A stretch of 64,000 bases of DNA from positions 1-64,000 of the IMG/VR virus record IMGVR_UViG_3300046810_000338; one strand, 5' to 3'. Below are positions 47,568-63,262 of this stretch, one piece after another (the first letter of the stretch is position 1; every line of letters begins with the position of its first letter). The notes under the pieces were generated by a model. That model was not told the DNA's origin. It ran no database searches and saw only the letters and a program-made list of their open reading frames with translations. The position numbers and the translations under genes are program-made.

Positions 47568-47666
47568 GTTTAATTCCCATTAGCTGACACATGCTTTGAC
47601 CACAACATGTCGATCAATAGCATGTCGGTATTGCAATACCCAATTTTTGAATGGAGTAAAGTCGGT

Positions 47667-48707
47667 ATGAGTAACAAAGTAAACATCGTTGCTTGCGGTG
47701 GCTTCGGTCAAAACATCATGATCCTTTTCTCGGAGCGTGAAGTCTTCAGACAGCTGCACGAACATCTGAACCTCATCGCCCTCGACACCAGTCCTTCTAA
47801 CCTGAAGCGCTTTGCTGGCAAGCCGATCGACGACGTCGTCACCAAGATCCTGGTCCCCAACGTTAACGGCTCCGGTAAATACCGGGCCGAGAACTACGAA
47901 CAGATCGTTTCCATGACCACCGAACTCGTCAACAGCGACCAGCTGTCCGAGGGCCTGACTATCCTCATCTCGTCGGGGTCCGGTGGTTCGGGTGCAGTAA
48001 CGGCTTCCGAGCTGCAACAGCTTCTGGGCGATCGCGGGCGTCCTGTGTTGGCCATGATGCTGGGCACTGACGAAGATGCGACGGCGGTGGAAAACACTCT
48101 CAAGTCCGTCAAGACCTTGCAACACAAGGCTGGCCAGGGCAAGAAGAACTTCACCTTGTTCTATGGCAGCAACCGCTTCCCAGACCCGAAAGACGAAAAG
48201 AAAACGGTCATCGACGAAGTCAAGGCCGATACGCTGTTCGTCACCAACCTGGAAGACCTGGTCATGGTTGGCCATCCAACCAACGAAGATCTGGACAGCA
48301 AGGACATCTACAACTGGCTGAACTTTCCGATCAAACAAACCGAGCCAGGCACCGTTCGTTTCCTGTCCCTGACCAGCCGCCGCGAGAGCGAAGATTTCCC
48401 GACCACCGGCGAAGCTCCAATCACTGCACTGTCCCTGCTGTCCAAGCGCGGTATCACTCCCCAGTTCCCAGAAGGTGCTGGTTGGACAACTCGCGGCTAT
48501 GTGACCGAAGGCCTGGCGTTCGTTGACGACGTGGTCGAAGTTCAGTACCAGCTCTTCGCCGGCAAATCGGCTAAGCTGACCAACCAGCTGGAACAAACCC
48601 TGAAGACCTTCGCCGGCATTCAGGAAAAGCAAGCCGAAGCTGCGGCGGGCGACAAGCTCAAGACGTCTGAAAAGGACAAAGTGTCCGACAGCGGTACGTT
48701 CCTGTAA
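47667..48707 (+). CDS. phuZ: PhuZ phage tubulin
   Basis: ACGGFGQNI, IALDTS.SN, NGSGKYR.EN, tubulin signature SGSGGSGAV, LDSKDIYNWL, acidic C-terminal tail. Confidence 0.93.
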   Translation: MSNKVNIVACGGFGQNIMILFSEREVFRQLHEHLNLIALDTSPSNLKRFAGKPIDDVVTKILVPNVNGSGKYRAENYEQIVSMTTELVNSDQLSEGLTILISSGSGGSGAVTASELQQLLGDRGRPVLAMMLGTDEDATAVENTLKSVKTLQHKAGQGKKNFTLFYGSNRFPDPKDEKKTVIDEVKADTLFVTNLEDLVMVGHPTNEDLDSKDIYNWLNFPIKQTEPGTVRFLSLTSRRESEDFPTTGEAPITALSLLSKRGITPQFPEGAGWTTRGYVTEGLAFVDDVVEVQYQLFAGKSAKLTNQLEQTLKTFAGIQEKQAEAAAGDKLKTSEKDKVSDSGTFL

Positions 48708-48940: not shown

Positions 48941-49077
48941 TAGTATTGAGTAGAGGATGGTTGCAGCCAACCATTGGAAGTCTAAGGACAGACTCCTACT
49001 TGCATCTCCAGGTGCTCAAGTCCCGCCCTTTCGGGGGCGGGCATTTATGCCCAACTGCTTAATTTTTGGAGGATTAC

Positions 49078-49494
49078 ATGCCGATCATCAGTACAGAACC
49101 CCTCGTTAACATTGACTTCGACCCAAGCTGTCAGAAACGCAATGACATGCTGGGGAAATGGAGGGGCAGTTCTAATCGGCTGGAACTGCATGGACTCTAT
49201 TCCCTGCGCCAGTTGGTCACGGCTAACAGCTCTACCAGCGACATGTTTTCGCATGACCCAACCAACGGTGGCGGTGCCAATAATTTCCTGATGTTACAGT
49301 ATCGGGGAACCAGACCAATGGCCAGGAACGATGCCGGCAAATTGGTCCACGCTATGGAGGCAGTCTTCCTTCGTTGCCTGCCTGCCGGGCGCCACTCGTT
49401 TACCCAGGAAAACTACTGGGTTGTTCCAATGACTGAGGAGAACATGTCTGGACTGTTCTTTTCACCTTTTCCTCTTACTCCGGTAAATGATTAA
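49078..49494 (+). CDS. Hypothetical protein
   Basis: GGAGG RBS. Confidence 0.75.
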   Translation: MPIISTEPLVNIDFDPSCQKRNDMLGKWRGSSNRLELHGLYSLRQLVTANSSTSDMFSHDPTNGGGANNFLMLQYRGTRPMARNDAGKLVHAMEAVFLRCLPAGRHSFTQENYWVVPMTEENMSGLFFSPFPLTPVND

Positions 49495-49509: not shown

Positions 49510-49620
49510 TATGCGGAAGTACATCTTCCGAATAGGACAGGCGGATACGTTGAGCGAATAGGGTCTTGAGTCCAATCAGCTGCAACCCCGCTAAAACCGA
49601 GCCCACCTTCGGGTGGGCTT
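49510..49620 (+). ncRNA. Candidate small structured RNA
   Basis: Two stems plus terminator in an ORF-free gap. Confidence 0.35.
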
Positions 49621-49646
49621 TTTTATGCAGTCATTAGGATACGACC

Positions 49647-50027
49647 ATGACCCAGTCTTACATCGGTACCAAACAAGTCCTGGCCTGGGCTCAGGCAGGT
49701 CTACAGGACAAAGAAGGCCAGCCAGGCTACGCAGTTAAATACGCCAATGGCCATGTCAGCTGGTCGCCCAAAGATGTGTTCGAGGCAGACTACATCGCCA
49801 TCGGTCACGTTGGCCACCTCCCCCCATACCAGCAAACCATCATTGGCGAACTGGCCCAATTGCGCGCCCGCATCGAAGCCTCCAACAAGTTCATCGCCGG
49901 CGAGATCCATGCAAGCCTTGATCCACTCGATCAGGAACTGATGGCACAGCAAGTGGTCTGCATGACGCAACTGGCCAGCATCCTCAACTCCCGGCTGGAT
50001 CGACTGGTCCAAAAGACTGAACAATGA
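49647..50027 (+). CDS. Two-domain phage protein, candidate nucleotide-signal sponge
   Basis: N-domain YIGTK.V.A...GYAVKY.NG..SWSPKDVFE..Y; C-domain LPPYQQ.I..E..QL..RI...F....L...DQEL...Q...M..L..IL..R. Confidence 0.6.
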   Translation: MTQSYIGTKQVLAWAQAGLQDKEGQPGYAVKYANGHVSWSPKDVFEADYIAIGHVGHLPPYQQTIIGELAQLRARIEASNKFIAGEIHASLDPLDQELMAQQVVCMTQLASILNSRLDRLVQKTEQ

Positions 50028-50239
50028 GCGGCGTGTTCAGATGCACTCGATGTAACTACGTCGACCACATGGACATCGTTTACTTTCTGGGCAACGATCG
50101 AGACGTAGACAATCGACCGATCAATTTGTTGTGTACGGTCTGCCACGGGCTGCCTTGGCATGACCGCATGCTGCGACTGAAATACAACCCAGAAATACAC
50201 GAGGTGGTCAATCCTCCCCCAGAACTTATTCAAACCTAA
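50024..50239 (+). CDS. Small Zn-finger protein (71 aa)
   Basis: CTRC...LCTVC...WH. Confidence 0.7.
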   Translation: MSGVFRCTRCNYVDHMDIVYFLGNDRDVDNRPINLLCTVCHGLPWHDRMLRLKYNPEIHEVVNPPPELIQT

Positions 50240-56549: not shown

Positions 56550-56978
56550 ATGTCCAGTCCAGCCATTGCGATCATTAACCTAGAAGAAATGATAGCTGAC
56601 TTTAGAAACTATCTCCGAGAAGATTGCGGTCAATCAGAGATGGCAGCACAGTTTCCAGACCATTTCTTGGTCCAAGAATTAGAATACCTTGCCAGAGTGG
56701 CTGTCAACAGAAACCACCTGAATGTTCACCCGCGACTGCGACGTACTCGCCACATCTTCAAAATGTTCGACCCAACCTTTTCTAAAGACCAGATCAATGA
56801 ATGGGCGGATGAAATGTACATGCGGGTACGTGAAGAATTGCCTACCCGTATTGCTGAAGCTGGACATATTTTCCAAACCCAGGCTGTCGGCAAAACGCTG
56901 TATATCAGATTACTTGTCTCCGCCGACGCATTTGGCTACGGCATCGACCCCCACTCGATTATTGACGCGGTGATCTAA
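56550..56978 (+). CDS. Hypothetical protein (142 aa)
   Basis: TAATG coupling to DNA polymerase. Confidence 0.75.
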   Translation: MSSPAIAIINLEEMIADFRNYLREDCGQSEMAAQFPDHFLVQELEYLARVAVNRNHLNVHPRLRRTRHIFKMFDPTFSKDQINEWADEMYMRVREELPTRIAEAGHIFQTQAVGKTLYIRLLVSADAFGYGIDPHSIIDAVI

Positions 56979-59239
56979 TGGATCATTTCCTTTTACACCC
57001 GGACCAGTACGTCCGAGATCTAAACGTAGTTGCCACCTACTTTCGCGACAATGCTTTCATGTTGGGCAAACTACGGAACATGCCGTGGGAGCCTGCTGTT
57101 GAGTTTGTTCGCCGCAAGGTGGGTAAAGATGGCGAGTTCCCCATCAAGAATCCACTGGTTACCATCATCGACAAAGATGAGAATGGTGACCGGTTTGTTC
57201 GCAAGGTAGGTTACCTCAACTATCTCAAGAACATCGTGGCGAAAGATCTTATCTGCTCGCCTAGCATGACCACATACCTGCGACCAAAGACCCTGCAAAG
57301 CGAAATGGGTCTGTACATCAACGGCAACCTTGGCCTGCGTAACGAAGCCAAAGAAGAAGGTCTGGTAGCAGAGCTTTCGGCTAACGGCTACGGCGCTCAG
57401 ATTCAGGATCTGATTGGCGACAGGAGTAAAGAAGGCTGGGTTATGCCCCCACTGACCCCTGCCTTGCAAGCTCGACTAGCCGACTTGGAGATCGAGTTCA
57501 AGAAACACGATCAGGTTGCCGGCATCAAGCACAACGAACAGACCTCGCACAAGATCTTCAACAACGGGATCTCTGGCATGCAGACCATTGGGTCTACGCC
57601 GTTTGTGTTGGTATCTGCCCACTCATCGCTGACCAGTGGGTGTCGTTCTGCAACCAGTTATGGTAACGCCACTATTGAGCGCTTTGTAGCCGGCTCAAGA
57701 CATTATTGGTCGCCAGAAGTAGTGATGACCCAGATCACTACGATCGTCACTCATACCGACTATGTCGAGTTTGAAAAGGTGATGACCAAGTACAACCTGA
57801 AATACCCCAACGTGGACGAGATCTACAAACTCATCAAGTACAGCACTGACCTTTATTGGCACAGTGAAGTTGAGATGGAGTTGATCATCGAGTACGTGCA
57901 AACGCTCAATCCATTGGAGCGTGCAGCCTTTGCCTACACAGGCGACATGTACCACCTGCGTAAGTTCAACCCAGAGTTCATGACCGTGTACCTGGACGAG
58001 CTTTCCATGGCGGTTAAGGGCGATCATCCTGATCCACTGACGGCCATCAAGAAAGTTAAAGGCGACCATCGGGCCCTGGCATTGATTCTGTGTGCCGAGG
58101 TTACTGCCGGTAAGTCCATTGACGACTTGAAGAACGAAGGGAACATGGAAGCCCTGTCCATGATCGTGTTGACCTTTGAACACATCATGGCTACTTTGGA
58201 TAAATACGCTGACCTGATCAAAGTGTTCTGGACGACGCTTAACGTGCCGCCTAACATTTCCAGGACGCGTGATATCCGTAGGCGCTCTGTGGTAGGTTCT
58301 GATACTGACTCCTGCCTCTTTGGGGTGCGTGAGTGGGTCAAGTGGAAGAACGGCTACGCCAAGTTCGACCAGCCATGTCAGGCAACCTGGCACACTGTGG
58401 TGTTCATGGCCTGTCAAACCGTGACACACGCATTGGCTTGCTTGTCGGCAGGTATGGGTGTAGAAGGGGATGATGTTAAGAAGCTGGCAATGAAGAACGA
58501 GTTTGCATTCTCTGTCTTCGGTCTGACCAACATCGCCAAACACTACATTGCCTCCATGATTGCAAAAGAAGGCAGTGTGTATAAGAAAGCCAAGAAGGAG
58601 ATCAAAGGAGTTCAGTACAAAGACTCCAACAGCCCACCAGAGATCATCGATGAGTCTAACGACAATATCGTGTCTGTGATGGACCAGATCTACCAACATG
58701 GCTCGTTTGAGATCATGCCGATCATCCGCGGTATGGCTGATACCGAACGGGAAGTTACCGAGTCGATCAAGAAGGGAAATACCAAGTACCTTAAGTCGGC
58801 GTATGTGCGGCCCAAGGAAGACTACAAGAAACCGATGTCGTCTAACTACTTCCATTACGAGCTGTGGCAAAAGGCATTCGCTCACCGAGGCGCGGTGCCT
58901 TCTCTGCCATATCGAGCGGTAAAGATTTCTGTGGACCTGCCTAACAAGACAGCCATTCGCGAGTGGATTGCTAACATTGAGAATCCAACCTGTAAGGCTG
59001 CCCTGGAAGACTTCTACATCCATGGTATTGATGGGGATAAACCAAAAGCTGCAATCACCTCGTTCCTCATGCCGCTTGACATTGTGCAACGTGATGGTAT
59101 CCCGCCAGAGATCTTAGAAGCCGCTGGTATCCGCAGACAGACCTACGCAGCAGTTAGTCCATTCTACCTGTTCGCAGAGACGCTAGGATTGCCTATGGTG
59201 AATAAGAACCTGACAACCATGCTGTCGGATAGTTTGTAA
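56978..59239 (+). CDS. Family B DNA polymerase, phiKZ gp50-like catalytic subunit
   Basis: Motif B-like KIFNNGISG, motif C-like VGSDTDS, KLAMKNEF, EIKGV; position upstream of the chimallin block. Confidence 0.9.
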   Translation: MDHFLLHPDQYVRDLNVVATYFRDNAFMLGKLRNMPWEPAVEFVRRKVGKDGEFPIKNPLVTIIDKDENGDRFVRKVGYLNYLKNIVAKDLICSPSMTTYLRPKTLQSEMGLYINGNLGLRNEAKEEGLVAELSANGYGAQIQDLIGDRSKEGWVMPPLTPALQARLADLEIEFKKHDQVAGIKHNEQTSHKIFNNGISGMQTIGSTPFVLVSAHSSLTSGCRSATSYGNATIERFVAGSRHYWSPEVVMTQITTIVTHTDYVEFEKVMTKYNLKYPNVDEIYKLIKYSTDLYWHSEVEMELIIEYVQTLNPLERAAFAYTGDMYHLRKFNPEFMTVYLDELSMAVKGDHPDPLTAIKKVKGDHRALALILCAEVTAGKSIDDLKNEGNMEALSMIVLTFEHIMATLDKYADLIKVFWTTLNVPPNISRTRDIRRRSVVGSDTDSCLFGVREWVKWKNGYAKFDQPCQATWHTVVFMACQTVTHALACLSAGMGVEGDDVKKLAMKNEFAFSVFGLTNIAKHYIASMIAKEGSVYKKAKKEIKGVQYKDSNSPPEIIDESNDNIVSVMDQIYQHGSFEIMPIIRGMADTEREVTESIKKGNTKYLKSAYVRPKEDYKKPMSSNYFHYELWQKAFAHRGAVPSLPYRAVKISVDLPNKTAIREWIANIENPTCKAALEDFYIHGIDGDKPKAAITSFLMPLDIVQRDGIPPEILEAAGIRRQTYAAVSPFYLFAETLGLPMVNKNLTTMLSDSL

Positions 59240-61210: not shown

Positions 61211-63262
61211 ATGCCCGTTAAGAAAACTGGCGATGGTGGAAACATCATGGCGGCGGCTTTGTTAGCTGCCGGTGTGAAGCCTTCCACCGAACCAACCCCG
61301 GCACCTGCCGCAGCGTCTTCCGCTGCTCCAGTTCAGCCGGCAGCAGAATCAGTGGCGCCCACCCCGGCACCAGTGAAACCAGAACCTGTGCAACCAGCGA
61401 CGCAGCAACGCGCTAACCCTGCACCCGTTCAACCAACCCCCGTACAAAAGGATACAGTGCAAATGTCTCAGAACACTCAGGACTTCTCCAACTCCCGTCG
61501 CGACCAGGCCCCTAACGGTCAGTTCACGCTGGAATCTCTCGGTGCTCGCCGCGTCCGTCCAATCGGTCGTTCGGCAGGCTCCGTGCGCGCCAAAGCCCTC
61601 GAAGAGGTGCTGATCAAAGAAATGTCCCGTTCCCTGCAACAGGACACCGTTTCCAAATTCGCTATCCAGACTCTGGACGCCAACTCGCTCGGCCTGCCAG
61701 TGCCTGCCGTTCTGATCATCCAGACCGTTGTTACCCAGGGCATCGACAACCTGTCGGTCTTCTCGATCCTGCTCGACGGCGACGATGTTCGTCTGCCTAA
61801 CCGCATCGACAAGGTCGAAGGCCGCTCCATCGAAACCCCAACCGTCGTCGGCGACATCTACAACAGTCAGGAATACCTGACTCGCATGACCGAACTGGTA
61901 ACCATGGCTCGCCCTGGCCGTCAGCTGAAAATCATCGACGCCGGTTGCATCGTGCTGCCGAAAGACTTCAACCTGGAACAGAGCGATATCCACGGCCTGC
62001 TGCACAAGTCCACGCTGGCCGCCTGGAACGCCATGAACCAGAACGTAGTCCTGGACGATACCCCTGCTTACACCCTGGTCGGCCGTAACAGCAACCAGGA
62101 ACAACTGATCGGTCGCATCAACACCACCGGCGAGAACTACCTCGACGAAGTGGGCATGCCAATCCGTTCCGACTTCGTCCTGGAAATGGACTCGTCCCGC
62201 CATCAAGCGGGCCGTGAATTCCTGACCAGTTCGAGCAACATCGTCAAGGTTGCTGGTTACGTTGAACCGGTTTACACCCAACCGGTCCAAGACCCGAATG
62301 CGCCGAACAACCAGCCGTTCCTGGCTCAGATCGTTCTGACTCGTCTGGCTACTGGCTACGACGCCGCCGACACCGAAATGAACATCCTCAGTCTGGTGAC
62401 TGCGGCGATGATCCAGGTGCAAAACGGCTGGGCGGACATGTTCCGTCCACGCTACAACAAGAAAGATGGCGATGTTGATTACCGCGACATCGGTGCTCTG
62501 GGTTACTGCACCGAGAAAGCTGCCAAGATCGACAGCCGTAGCGACAGCTTCAAGAACAACTTCCCGGCCTTCATGCGCGACTACTTCCGCCTCAATCAAG
62601 GCGTGGTCTTCGCTCTGGACATTCCTGAAGTCGGTCCTGACGTACTGAACCTCGACATCTTCCGCGCTGTGGCCAGCGGCAACGCCAACGCAATCGCTGC
62701 TTTCATCCGTGCCTGCGACAACCTGACCGGTGGCATCTACAGCAAGAAAGCGTCGATCATCGGCGATTTCTCGATGATCATCGATACCGGCAACCGCATC
62801 CACAACGGCTACTACCCAACCGACACCGGCACTGCGGCGATCCGCGATATCCGCGACATCGATCTGCTGGCCGTTGCCAACCTGTACGGCAAAACCAACC
62901 CTGCGGCAATGATGCAGTGGGCTGACTCGTTCTCGCCGAACACCGCTCCTGCGGCTGTACGCATGGCGAACCGCCTGGCCATCATCGACGACGCTCTGAA
63001 CGGTCGTCAGGTTATCACTGGTTACTCGGGCCGTTACTTCATCGGTCCAAAATGGTTCGAAGTGATCACCTCGGCGTGCCGTGAAGCTGGTCTGGTGGTT
63101 AACCCTGCCAACATGGTTCACGGTCTGGGCTCCGGTCTGATCATGGGCGGCTACGACTACTCGCAGTTCACTGCCGGCCAAGCTGGTCAGTCGATCTACG
63201 GTGGCGCTACCGCTGCTGGTCCAGGCGCAGCATTCAACGGCCGTCCTGGCGGTCGTTGGTAA
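61211..63262 (+). CDS. chmA: Chimallin, phage nuclear shell protein
   Basis: 683 aa, extreme codon bias, disordered termini, FRPR..KK..VDYRDIGALG and FALDIPEVGP segments; directly upstream of nvRNAP beta-prime as in phiKZ gp54-gp55. Confidence 0.88.
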   Translation: MPVKKTGDGGNIMAAALLAAGVKPSTEPTPAPAAASSAAPVQPAAESVAPTPAPVKPEPVQPATQQRANPAPVQPTPVQKDTVQMSQNTQDFSNSRRDQAPNGQFTLESLGARRVRPIGRSAGSVRAKALEEVLIKEMSRSLQQDTVSKFAIQTLDANSLGLPVPAVLIIQTVVTQGIDNLSVFSILLDGDDVRLPNRIDKVEGRSIETPTVVGDIYNSQEYLTRMTELVTMARPGRQLKIIDAGCIVLPKDFNLEQSDIHGLLHKSTLAAWNAMNQNVVLDDTPAYTLVGRNSNQEQLIGRINTTGENYLDEVGMPIRSDFVLEMDSSRHQAGREFLTSSSNIVKVAGYVEPVYTQPVQDPNAPNNQPFLAQIVLTRLATGYDAADTEMNILSLVTAAMIQVQNGWADMFRPRYNKKDGDVDYRDIGALGYCTEKAAKIDSRSDSFKNNFPAFMRDYFRLNQGVVFALDIPEVGPDVLNLDIFRAVASGNANAIAAFIRACDNLTGGIYSKKASIIGDFSMIIDTGNRIHNGYYPTDTGTAAIRDIRDIDLLAVANLYGKTNPAAMMQWADSFSPNTAPAAVRMANRLAIIDDALNGRQVITGYSGRYFIGPKWFEVITSACREAGLVVNPANMVHGLGSGLIMGGYDYSQFTAGQAGQSIYGGATAAGPGAAFNGRPGGRW

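What the first reader, a model, noticed from the sequence alone, without database searches (positions are those of the whole stretch)
49647..50027. Two-module protein built from domains typical of anti-defence sponge fusions
Seen: N-module YIGTK...GY.V.Y..G..SWSPK.VFE..Y fused to a helical C-module LPPYQQ...E...L..RI...F...Q...M...L..R. From memory, both modules recur in phage proteins fused to Tad2 (DUF2829) and other nucleotide-sequestering sponges; I cannot assign either module to a named sponge with certainty. Inference: sequesters Thoeris or CBASS signals (gcADPR, cGAMP), which a nuclear shell cannot block.
Basis: partly seen in the sequence, partly recalled or inferred. Interest (0 to 1): 0.6.

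Follow-up and report, generated by a model that had tools for sequence, protein, structure and literature searches.

The report
Thoeris sponge gene in jumbo phage
This small gene of a nucleus-forming jumbo phage encodes a member of the known Sequestin family of "sponge" proteins, which soak up the alarm molecule of the bacterial Thoeris defence; it is preceded by a small beta-strand module that sits in front of at least five unrelated kinds of phage sponge.

Summary
The ORF is real: window 49647-50027, + strand, 126 aa, with both described modules. The C-terminal helical hairpin (residues 59-119) matches Pfam PF21825 well above its cut-off. Tal et al. 2025 showed this family to be "Sequestin", a sponge for 3'cADPR (1''-3' gcADPR) that blocks type I Thoeris. 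The three residues whose mutation kills Sequestin activity are kept (E68, Q102, R116). The dispensable arginine is a threonine here (T64). A homodimer prediction passed its controls (0.61 against 0.07), with antiparallel helix packing and these residues at the interface.

The N-terminal 53-residue beta module has no Pfam family. It is homologous to the N-domain of "RyR Tad" (phage CB1 gp68), which forms a strand-swapped dimer in the crystal and is not needed for anti-Thoeris activity. A profile search found about 4,000 protein clusters with this module. In the best 150, the only Pfam domains behind it are Sequestin, Tad2 and Acb4.

The phage encodes PhuZ and a chimallin homologue, so it is nucleus-forming. 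This is a new member of a known family. Ligand binding is inferred, not shown.

The parts
49647..50027 (+). Complete gene, 126 codons plus stop: N-module followed by a Sequestin domain
   Evidence: homologues; AF2 model pLDDT 91.8, pTM 0.81
49647..49805 (+). N-module, residues 1-53: five beta strands and one short helix. Homologous to the N-terminal domain of RyR Tad (phage CB1 gp68).
   Evidence: No Pfam hit. AF2 strands 2-6, 10-15, 27-31, 37-41, 50-55 and helix 42-48. hhalign against gp68 residues 1-75: probability 95.5%, E 1.6e-8. Own-genome profile match 49647-49814.
49821..50003 (+). Sequestin domain (Pfam PF21825, crAss001_48), residues 59-119; the helical hairpin runs over residues 60-125
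   Evidence: (46.2 bits, full model 1-61)
49848..49850 (+). Codon E68, equivalent to SequestinA E12 (essential for activity)
   Evidence: Invariant in alignments A1 and A5; mutational data; at the predicted dimer interface
49950..49952 (+). Codon Q102, equivalent to SequestinA Q47 (essential; contributed by the second protomer)
   Evidence: contacts R116 of the other copy in the dimer model
49992..49994 (+). Codon R116, equivalent to SequestinA R61 (essential)
49836..49838 (+). Codon T64, at the position of the conserved Arg (SequestinA R8). Here the window protein departs from the family.
   Evidence: the R8A and R7A mutants kept activity
49636..49639 (+). AGGA, a likely ribosome-binding site 7 nt before the ATG
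   Evidence: Read directly from the sequence
49599..49620 (+). Terminator-like hairpin (9 bp stem, T run) that closes the upstream unit, so the gene appears to head a new transcript

Best explanation
The gene encodes a cytoplasmic signal sponge of the Sequestin family.

Proposed mechanism. Two copies pack their C-terminal helical hairpins back to back and antiparallel. This makes two symmetric pockets at the interface, each lined by E68 and R116 of one chain and Q102 of the other. The pockets capture 1''-3' gcADPR (3'cADPR), the signal made by the ThsB TIR protein of type I Thoeris. The ThsA NADase is then never switched on and the infected cell is not shut down.

Role of the N-module. The 53-residue N-terminal beta module is not the ligand-binding part. 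It is a recurrent N-terminal accessory of phage sponges and most likely clamps the dimer by pairing or exchanging its first strand with the partner chain.

Why a nucleus-forming phage would need it. The chimallin shell protects DNA but cannot stop a small-molecule alarm made and read in the cytoplasm.

Shown here by computation: family membership, fold, kept key residues, a predicted dimer, and the fusion pattern. Inferred from experiments on relatives: ligand binding and Thoeris inhibition.
For: - Family: PF21825 hit at E 1.1e-11, 44.8 bits against a cut-off of 24.8, covering the full model; confirmed on the genome at 46.2 bits.
- What the family does: PF21825 is Sequestin. Ten of 13 tested members inhibited type I Thoeris. 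Purified protein depleted 3'cADPR at a 1:1 ratio. E12A, Q47A and R61A lost activity; R8A did not.
- Key residues: E68, Q102 and R116 are invariant in an alignment that includes Ab09 gp59.
- Fold: AF2 gives a helical hairpin over residues 60-125 with pLDDT above 92.
- Dimer: homodimer prediction ipSAE 0.61 against a best control of 0.07. This mark was reached by 21 of 30 solved homodimers and 0 of 23 solved monomers. The runs agree in at least 98% of contacts, and partner pLDDT was 85 in all three runs. Contacts 109-109, 105-109, 116-102, 116-98, 119-95, 71-71 and 68-75 mean antiparallel packing, with the key residues at the interface. N-module contacts are 4-12/13 and 7-49.
- N-module: hhalign to the RyR Tad N-domain gives probability 95.5%, E 1.6e-8, and BLASTP of an intermediate gives E 4e-5. 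In the RyR Tad crystal that domain forms a strand-1-swapped dimer, and it had no activity alone.
- Phage type: PhuZ and chimallin homologues lie in the same window. phiKZ Tad1 is a precedent.
Against: - No measurement exists for this protein.
- It is a divergent member: at most 59% identity to any homologue overall, about 39% in the C-module, and a lower Pfam score than its relatives, which score 52-66 bits.
- It departs from family-conserved positions: R64 is T, Y109 is L, and K78/L79 are A/S.
- Three of 13 tested family members were inactive.
- None of the 13 tested Sequestins carried the N-module, so the effect of the module on a Sequestin has never been tested.
- The dimer pass may partly reflect the model's memory of similar helical dimers (caveat).
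- The host is unknown, so whether it has Thoeris is unknown.
Confidence: 0.65

Rival explanations
1. The protein has the Sequestin fold but a shifted ligand. It is still a dimeric sponge, but the altered pocket (T64 instead of Arg, L109 instead of Tyr) binds a different nucleotide signal, such as another cADPR isomer, His-ADPR, N7-cADPR or a cyclic oligonucleotide, and so counters a different system.
For: It deviates at positions conserved in at least 90% of the family. Sponge families often turn out broader than first described: Tad1 and Tad2 bind CBASS signals, and RyR Tad binds several cADPR isomers. The Ab09 Acb4-Sequestin fusion also binds 2',3'-cAA, although Acb4 may account for that.
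Against: The three residues needed for 3'cADPR-dependent activity are kept. Ab09 gp59 also has Leu at the Tyr position and binds gcADPR tightly. R8A did not abolish activity. The tested Sequestins hit only type I Thoeris.
Confidence: 0.15
2. The protein is a double sponge. The N-module is itself a ligand-binding domain for a second, untested immune signal, as in Acb4-Tad2 and Acb4-Sequestin fusions, so the protein blocks two pathways.
For: The module sits almost only next to sponge domains, and that is how Sequestin itself was discovered. Its conserved residues are rich in aromatics and lysines (Y5, K9, Y28, Y32, W39, K42, F45) and lie at the predicted dimer interface. Short, apparently stand-alone forms exist.
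Against: RyR Tad residues 1-86 had no apparent activity against type I Thoeris, and the C-domain alone was sufficient. The module is only about 50 residues. Its conservation is equally explained by core packing and dimer contacts. Its fixed N-terminal position, unlike true sponge-sponge fusions that occur in either order, suggests an accessory role.
Confidence: 0.1
3. The protein is not an immune-evasion protein. It would be a small dimeric coiled-coil protein with some other role, such as a regulator or an assembly factor, that merely shares a common helical-hairpin shape.
For: Helical hairpins are a generic fold. The whole-model PDB search gave nothing specific. crAss001 gp48-like proteins carry unrelated legacy labels such as "Shock protein C".
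Against: The match is by sequence profile, not only by shape, and it keeps the functional residue triad. The architecture partners are exclusively sponges. No DNA-binding or structural family hit was found.
Confidence: 0.07

Closest known systems
Sequestin family (Pfam PF21825, crAss001_48): SequestinA-J, T4 Y16O, and the Sequestin domain of Pseudomonas phage Ab09 gp59
   Same: Profile match above the cut-off. Helical hairpin of about 60 residues. Predicted antiparallel homodimer. The E/Q/R triad is kept. Encoded by a phage. The architecture N-module plus Sequestin is already listed at least 94 times in Table S1 of Tal et al., including the P. aeruginosa prophage protein P0006, which is 54% identical to the window protein.
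   Different: All 13 tested Sequestins lacked the N-module. The window protein has Thr where the family has Arg (R8 position) and is among the more divergent members. It comes from a chimallin-encoding jumbo phage. It was not found in the stored part of Table S1, but that file is truncated.
RyR Tad (gp68 of Pectobacterium phage vB_PatP_CB1)
   Same: Homologous N-terminal five-stranded beta module placed in front of a gcADPR sponge domain. It is a dimer in which both domains take part, and the same is predicted here.
   Different: Its sponge domain is a ryanodine-receptor Repeat12-like helical domain, unrelated to Sequestin. Its N-module is the long form, with an extra helix-containing insert between strands 2 and 3.
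Tad2 (PF11195, DUF2829) and Acb4 (PF13876)
   Same: Both are fusion partners of both modules of this protein. Both are nucleotide-signal sponges that work as homo-oligomers.
   Different: Neither domain is present in this protein or in this genome record. GenBank labels of N-module-Sequestin proteins as "DUF2829 domain-containing" are not backed by the Pfam model.
phiKZ Tad1
   Same: A gcADPR and cyclic-nucleotide sponge encoded by a nucleus-forming jumbo phage, so the biological logic is the same.
   Different: It belongs to an unrelated family and fold and is a hexamer. It is reported to be injected with the virion; nothing is known about packaging of the window protein.

Membership tests
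Sequestin (PF21825) | Sequence profile match above Pfam's gathering score | tested here: met
   44.8 bits against 24.8, E 1.1e-11, model positions 1-61 of 61; 46.2 bits on the genome
Sequestin (PF21825) | Two-helix hairpin of about 60-80 residues | tested here: met
   AF2 helices 60-83 and 93-125 with block pLDDT 92-98. BFVD matches to stand-alone hairpin proteins, including crAss001 gp48, at TM 0.9 by target.
Sequestin (PF21825) | Residues essential for activity (SequestinA E12, Q47, R61) | tested here: met
   E68, Q102 and R116 are invariant in A5, which includes Ab09 gp59. E68 and Q102 are invariant and R116 at least 90% conserved in A1. Residue mapping follows.
Sequestin (PF21825) | Conserved Arg predicted to contact the phosphates (SequestinA R8) | tested here: not met
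   T64 in the window protein, Arg in at least 90% of relatives. The feature is not essential: R8A and R7A kept activity.
Sequestin (PF21825) | Antiparallel homodimer (or tetramer) with pockets at the interface | tested here: met
   Prediction only: ipSAE 0.61 against a best control of 0.07. This mark was reached by 21 of 30 solved homodimers and 0 of 23 solved monomers. Contact pairs have constant index sums (109-109, 116-102, 71-71), and residues 68, 102 and 116 are in the interface.
Sequestin (PF21825) | Binds 3'cADPR and cancels type I Thoeris | not testable with these tools
   Needs protein biochemistry and plaque assays. 3'cADPR is not among the ligands offered for co-folding.
RyR Tad N-terminal domain family (unnamed N-module) | Sequence homology to CB1 gp68 residues 1-70 | tested here: met
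   hhalign probability 95.5%, E 1.6e-8 over nearly the whole module; BLASTP of the long-form member P0070 against gp68, E 4e-5
RyR Tad N-terminal domain family (unnamed N-module) | Five-stranded beta sheet that dimerises through strand 1 | tested here: inconclusive
   Five strands are predicted. The dimer model has inter-chain contacts 4-12/13 and 7-49. This is compatible with strand exchange but does not resolve it. The solved structure was not in the PDB copy.
Tad2 (PF11195) | Profile match to the DUF2829 domain | tested here: not met
   No hit at E up to 10. The N-module profile finds no Tad2 chain in the PDB.
Acb4 (PF13876) | Profile match to the Gp49/gene 66 domain | tested here: not met
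   No hit

The most novel reading that the evidence does not exclude
The 50-residue N-module may be a general N-terminal adaptor for phage signal sponges, and therefore a search handle for new ones.

It precedes at least five unrelated sponge folds: Sequestin, Tad2, Acb4, Lockin and the RyR-like domain. In the best 150 representatives, no Pfam family other than the first three follows it. About a fifth of the module-bearing proteins longer than 95 residues (24 of 115) have tails that none of these families explains. Examples are the roughly 270-residue tail of Xoo-sp14 gp45 and the tails with a conserved W-A-x-x-G-A-P-K ending. These tails would be undiscovered sponge or anti-signalling families.

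The module itself would add a function that over-expression assays miss, such as a strand-swap clamp that raises avidity at natural expression levels, or cross-linking of sponge oligomers.
Probability: 0.3. Interest if true: 0.6.

Novelty: new member of a known kind. Interest (0 to 1): 0.4.

Why it matters
Only one anti-defence protein, phiKZ Tad1, is so far described for jumbo phages (a 2026 review). A Sequestin-type sponge in a distant chimallin-encoding phage supports the idea that nucleus-forming phages still have to disarm small-molecule immune signalling. It also gives a concrete gene to test.

The more general result concerns the N-module. It marks thousands of phage proteins and sits almost only in front of sponge domains. 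That makes it a cheap guilt-by-fusion handle for finding new sponge families. It also raises the question of what this conserved clamp contributes, given that it is dispensable when the protein is over-expressed.

Tried and rejected
- N-module as a trimmed Tad2 (DUF2829). I suspected this because GenBank labels two N-module-Sequestin proteins as DUF2829. Rejected: PF11195 does not hit them, and the N-module profile finds no Tad2 chain in the PDB.
- Specific structural relatives of the N-module. Foldseek against the PDB found nothing at E up to 0.001. VIA-align gave a best Z of 5.3 (Mfd RNAP-interacting domain), tied with CarD, UvrD/PcrA Tudor and SH3 domains. This is a generic small barrel, so no RNAP-binding claim is made.
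- Whole-protein fold search against the PDB: nothing.
- Sequence search of the PDB with the protein and with the N-module profile: nothing meaningful. The RyR Tad and Sequestin-domain crystal structures were not in the copy.
- NCBIfam: no hit.
- Stand-alone close relatives of the N-module by word search: only one 30-residue fragment. The profile search does find short forms, many of which look truncated.
- Nearby DNA relatives among isolate phages: none by megablast.
- Neighbouring ORFs: no Pfam or PHROG family, so no recognisable anti-defence island.
- Tails of longer relatives: they do not correspond to the downstream ORFs of the window.
- The exact protein in Table S1 of Tal et al.: not found, but the stored file is truncated.
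- My first regex classification of tails was too crude. I replaced it with iterative HMMs.
- Not used: reads tools, other genetic codes and metagenome scans were not needed.

Full report
**1. The observation**

The window holds one ORF at 49647..50027 on the + strand, 126 aa.
- The open frame reaches only three codons upstream of the ATG.
- Homologues start with the same MTQxYIGTK.
- An AGGA lies 7 nt upstream of the ATG, and a terminator-like hairpin (49599-49620) closes the preceding unit.
- The gene is not a chance ORF. It hits Pfam PF21825 at E 1.1e-11 and phrog_32732 at E 6.5e-30, and it has 68 homologues in the word search down to E 8e-35.

**2. The C-module is a named sponge**

Residues 59-119 match PF21825 (crAss001_48) over the whole model, at 44.8 bits against a cut-off of 24.8.

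Tal et al. (bioRxiv 10.1101/2025.07.12.664507) picked this Pfam family because it is the commonest fusion partner of Tad2 (PF11195) and Acb4 (PF13876), and named it Sequestin. Their findings:
- Ten of 13 tested members cancel type I Thoeris, and none affects type II Thoeris, CBASS or Pycsar.
- The purified protein depletes 3'cADPR.
- Models show antiparallel homodimers or tetramers with pockets at the interface.

A second preprint (10.64898/2026.06.04.730250) solved the Sequestin domain of Pseudomonas phage Ab09 gp59. It is an antiparallel dimer with two symmetric pockets and binds 1''-3' gcADPR tightly.

Mutational data: SequestinA E12A, Q47A and R61A lose activity, while R8A does not. I mapped these positions through the published sequences and through an alignment by reference that includes Ab09 gp59. 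The window protein has E68, Q102 and R116 at the three essential positions and T64 at the dispensable Arg position.
- E68 and Q102 are invariant, and R116 is at least 90% conserved, among 39 close homologues.
- The protein is nevertheless a divergent member. It also differs at Y109 (Leu, as in the active Ab09 protein) and at K78/L79.

**3. Fold and assembly**

AlphaFold2 with the family alignment gives pLDDT 91.8 and pTM 0.81. It predicts five strands and a short helix in residues 1-53, then a helical hairpin over residues 60-125.

The score was 0.61 against a best control of 0.07. This mark was reached by 21 of 30 solved homodimers and 0 of 23 solved monomers. The runs agree in at least 98% of contacts, and pLDDT was 85.
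- The best-defined contacts (109-109, 105-109, 112-102, 116-102, 116-98, 119-95, 71-71, 68-75) have constant index sums. The helices therefore pack antiparallel to their symmetry mates.
- R116 of one chain touches Q102 of the other. The published pocket combines residues in the same way.
- The N-modules also touch each other (4-12/13, 7-49).
- This supports a Sequestin-like dimer but does not show it.

**4. The N-module**

It has no Pfam or NCBIfam family. Folded alone it is a small SH3/Tudor-like barrel (pLDDT 83.8) with only generic matches in the PDB (best Z 5.3).

A profile of 21 N-modules was searched against 1.84 billion representative proteins.
- It found 3,998 proteins at E up to 0.001 and 937 at E up to 1e-10, about nine in ten with the module at the very N-terminus.
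- In the best 150, Pfam sees only three families behind it: Sequestin in 31, Tad2 in 28 and Acb4 in 24.
- Iterative local HMMs give N+Sequestin 31, N+Acb4 29, N+Tad2 29 and triple fusions 2. A further 35 are short (95 aa or less) or contain the N-module only, and 24 are unassigned.
- Two Lockin proteins in Table S4 of Tal et al. also carry it.

The module is homologous to the N-terminal domain of RyR Tad, gp68 of Pectobacterium phage CB1. hhalign gives probability 95.5%, E 1.6e-8, and BLASTP of the long-form member P0070 gives E 4e-5. For that protein the preprint reports three things:
- In the crystal, the N-domain forms a dimer by inserting strand 1 into the partner's five-stranded sheet.
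- Residues 1-86 alone have no apparent anti-Thoeris activity.
- The C-domain alone suffices.

The best reading is therefore that the N-module is an accessory dimer clamp and not a second sponge. Only one defence system was tested, however, and no Sequestin carrying the module has been tested.

**5. Context**

The record is an IMG/VR virus contig of 228,499 bp, about 82% complete.
- The window holds a PhuZ tubulin (47607-48707), a DNA polymerase with at most 36% identity to any isolate phage (best matches Xoo-sp14, FLC9 and Ea35-70-like phages), and a homologue of the phiKZ nuclear shell protein at 61502-63226 (E 2.9e-26).
- It is thus a distant nucleus-forming phage.
- The genome has one Sequestin match and one N-module, and no Tad2 or Acb4 match.
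- Homologous fusions occur in the jumbo phages Xoo-sp14 and pPa_SNUABM_DT01.
- A 2026 review states that phiKZ Tad1 is so far the only anti-defence protein described in jumbo phages.

**6. Verdict**

- The protein is a Sequestin-family sponge.
- It is expected to bind 1''-3' gcADPR and counter type I Thoeris. CBASS is not expected to be affected.
- It carries the widespread N-terminal accessory module.

It is a new member of a known kind. The same two-module architecture is already listed many times in the Sequestin table of Tal et al.. That paper's text and the other papers I searched do not discuss the module's association with several sponge families. The RyR Tad preprint calls it only a fold of unknown function.

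Confidence is about 0.65 in the full mechanism and above 0.9 in family membership. The main open points are whether this divergent copy still binds the ligand, and what the N-module adds.

Noticed in passing
window 50024-50239 (+): A 71-aa ORF overlaps the sponge gene's stop codon by ATGA, which suggests translational coupling. It has two CxxC pairs and looks like a zinc ribbon. It has no Pfam or PHROG hit. It may be a second small anti-defence or regulatory protein.
   Followed up: partly
window 61502-63226 (+), 47607-48707 (+), 56978-59239 (+): These are a chimallin (phiKZ gp54) homologue (E 2.9e-26, 25% identity), a PhuZ tubulin and a DNA polymerase. The polymerase has at most 36% identity to any isolate phage, so this is a deep-branching nucleus-forming jumbo phage.
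   Followed up: partly
P0035, P0036, P0040-P0043, P0047-P0049, P0051, P0052 (alignment A1, columns 27-60): A subset of N-module-Sequestin proteins carries an insertion of about 32 residues with four conserved cysteines between strands 2 and 3 of the N-module. It looks like a zinc knuckle. The window protein lacks it.
   Followed up: no
L009:2501-3697 (Xanthomonas phage Xoo-sp14 gene 45); P0081, P0133: In the nearest jumbo-phage relatives, the N-module-Sequestin unit is followed by a tail of about 270 residues with no Pfam family. The tail has no counterpart in the window.
   Followed up: partly
P0135, P0140, P0164, P0118, P0094 and 19 others: 24 of the 115 N-module proteins longer than 95 aa have tails not assignable to Sequestin, Tad2 or Acb4. 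Several share a C-terminal W-A-x-x-G-A-P-K motif. They are candidates for further sponge families.
   Followed up: no
L001:1468-1902 (Acinetobacter phage 4316); L002:1498-1896 (Bacteroides phage BF1-TP2): GenBank calls these proteins "DUF2829 domain-containing", but Pfam finds only PF21825 behind a long-form N-module. The label appears to be an annotation carry-over.
   Followed up: yes
window 49066-49494 (+): A 142-aa ORF lies between PhuZ and the terminator. It has no family hit in Pfam or PHROGs.
   Followed up: partly
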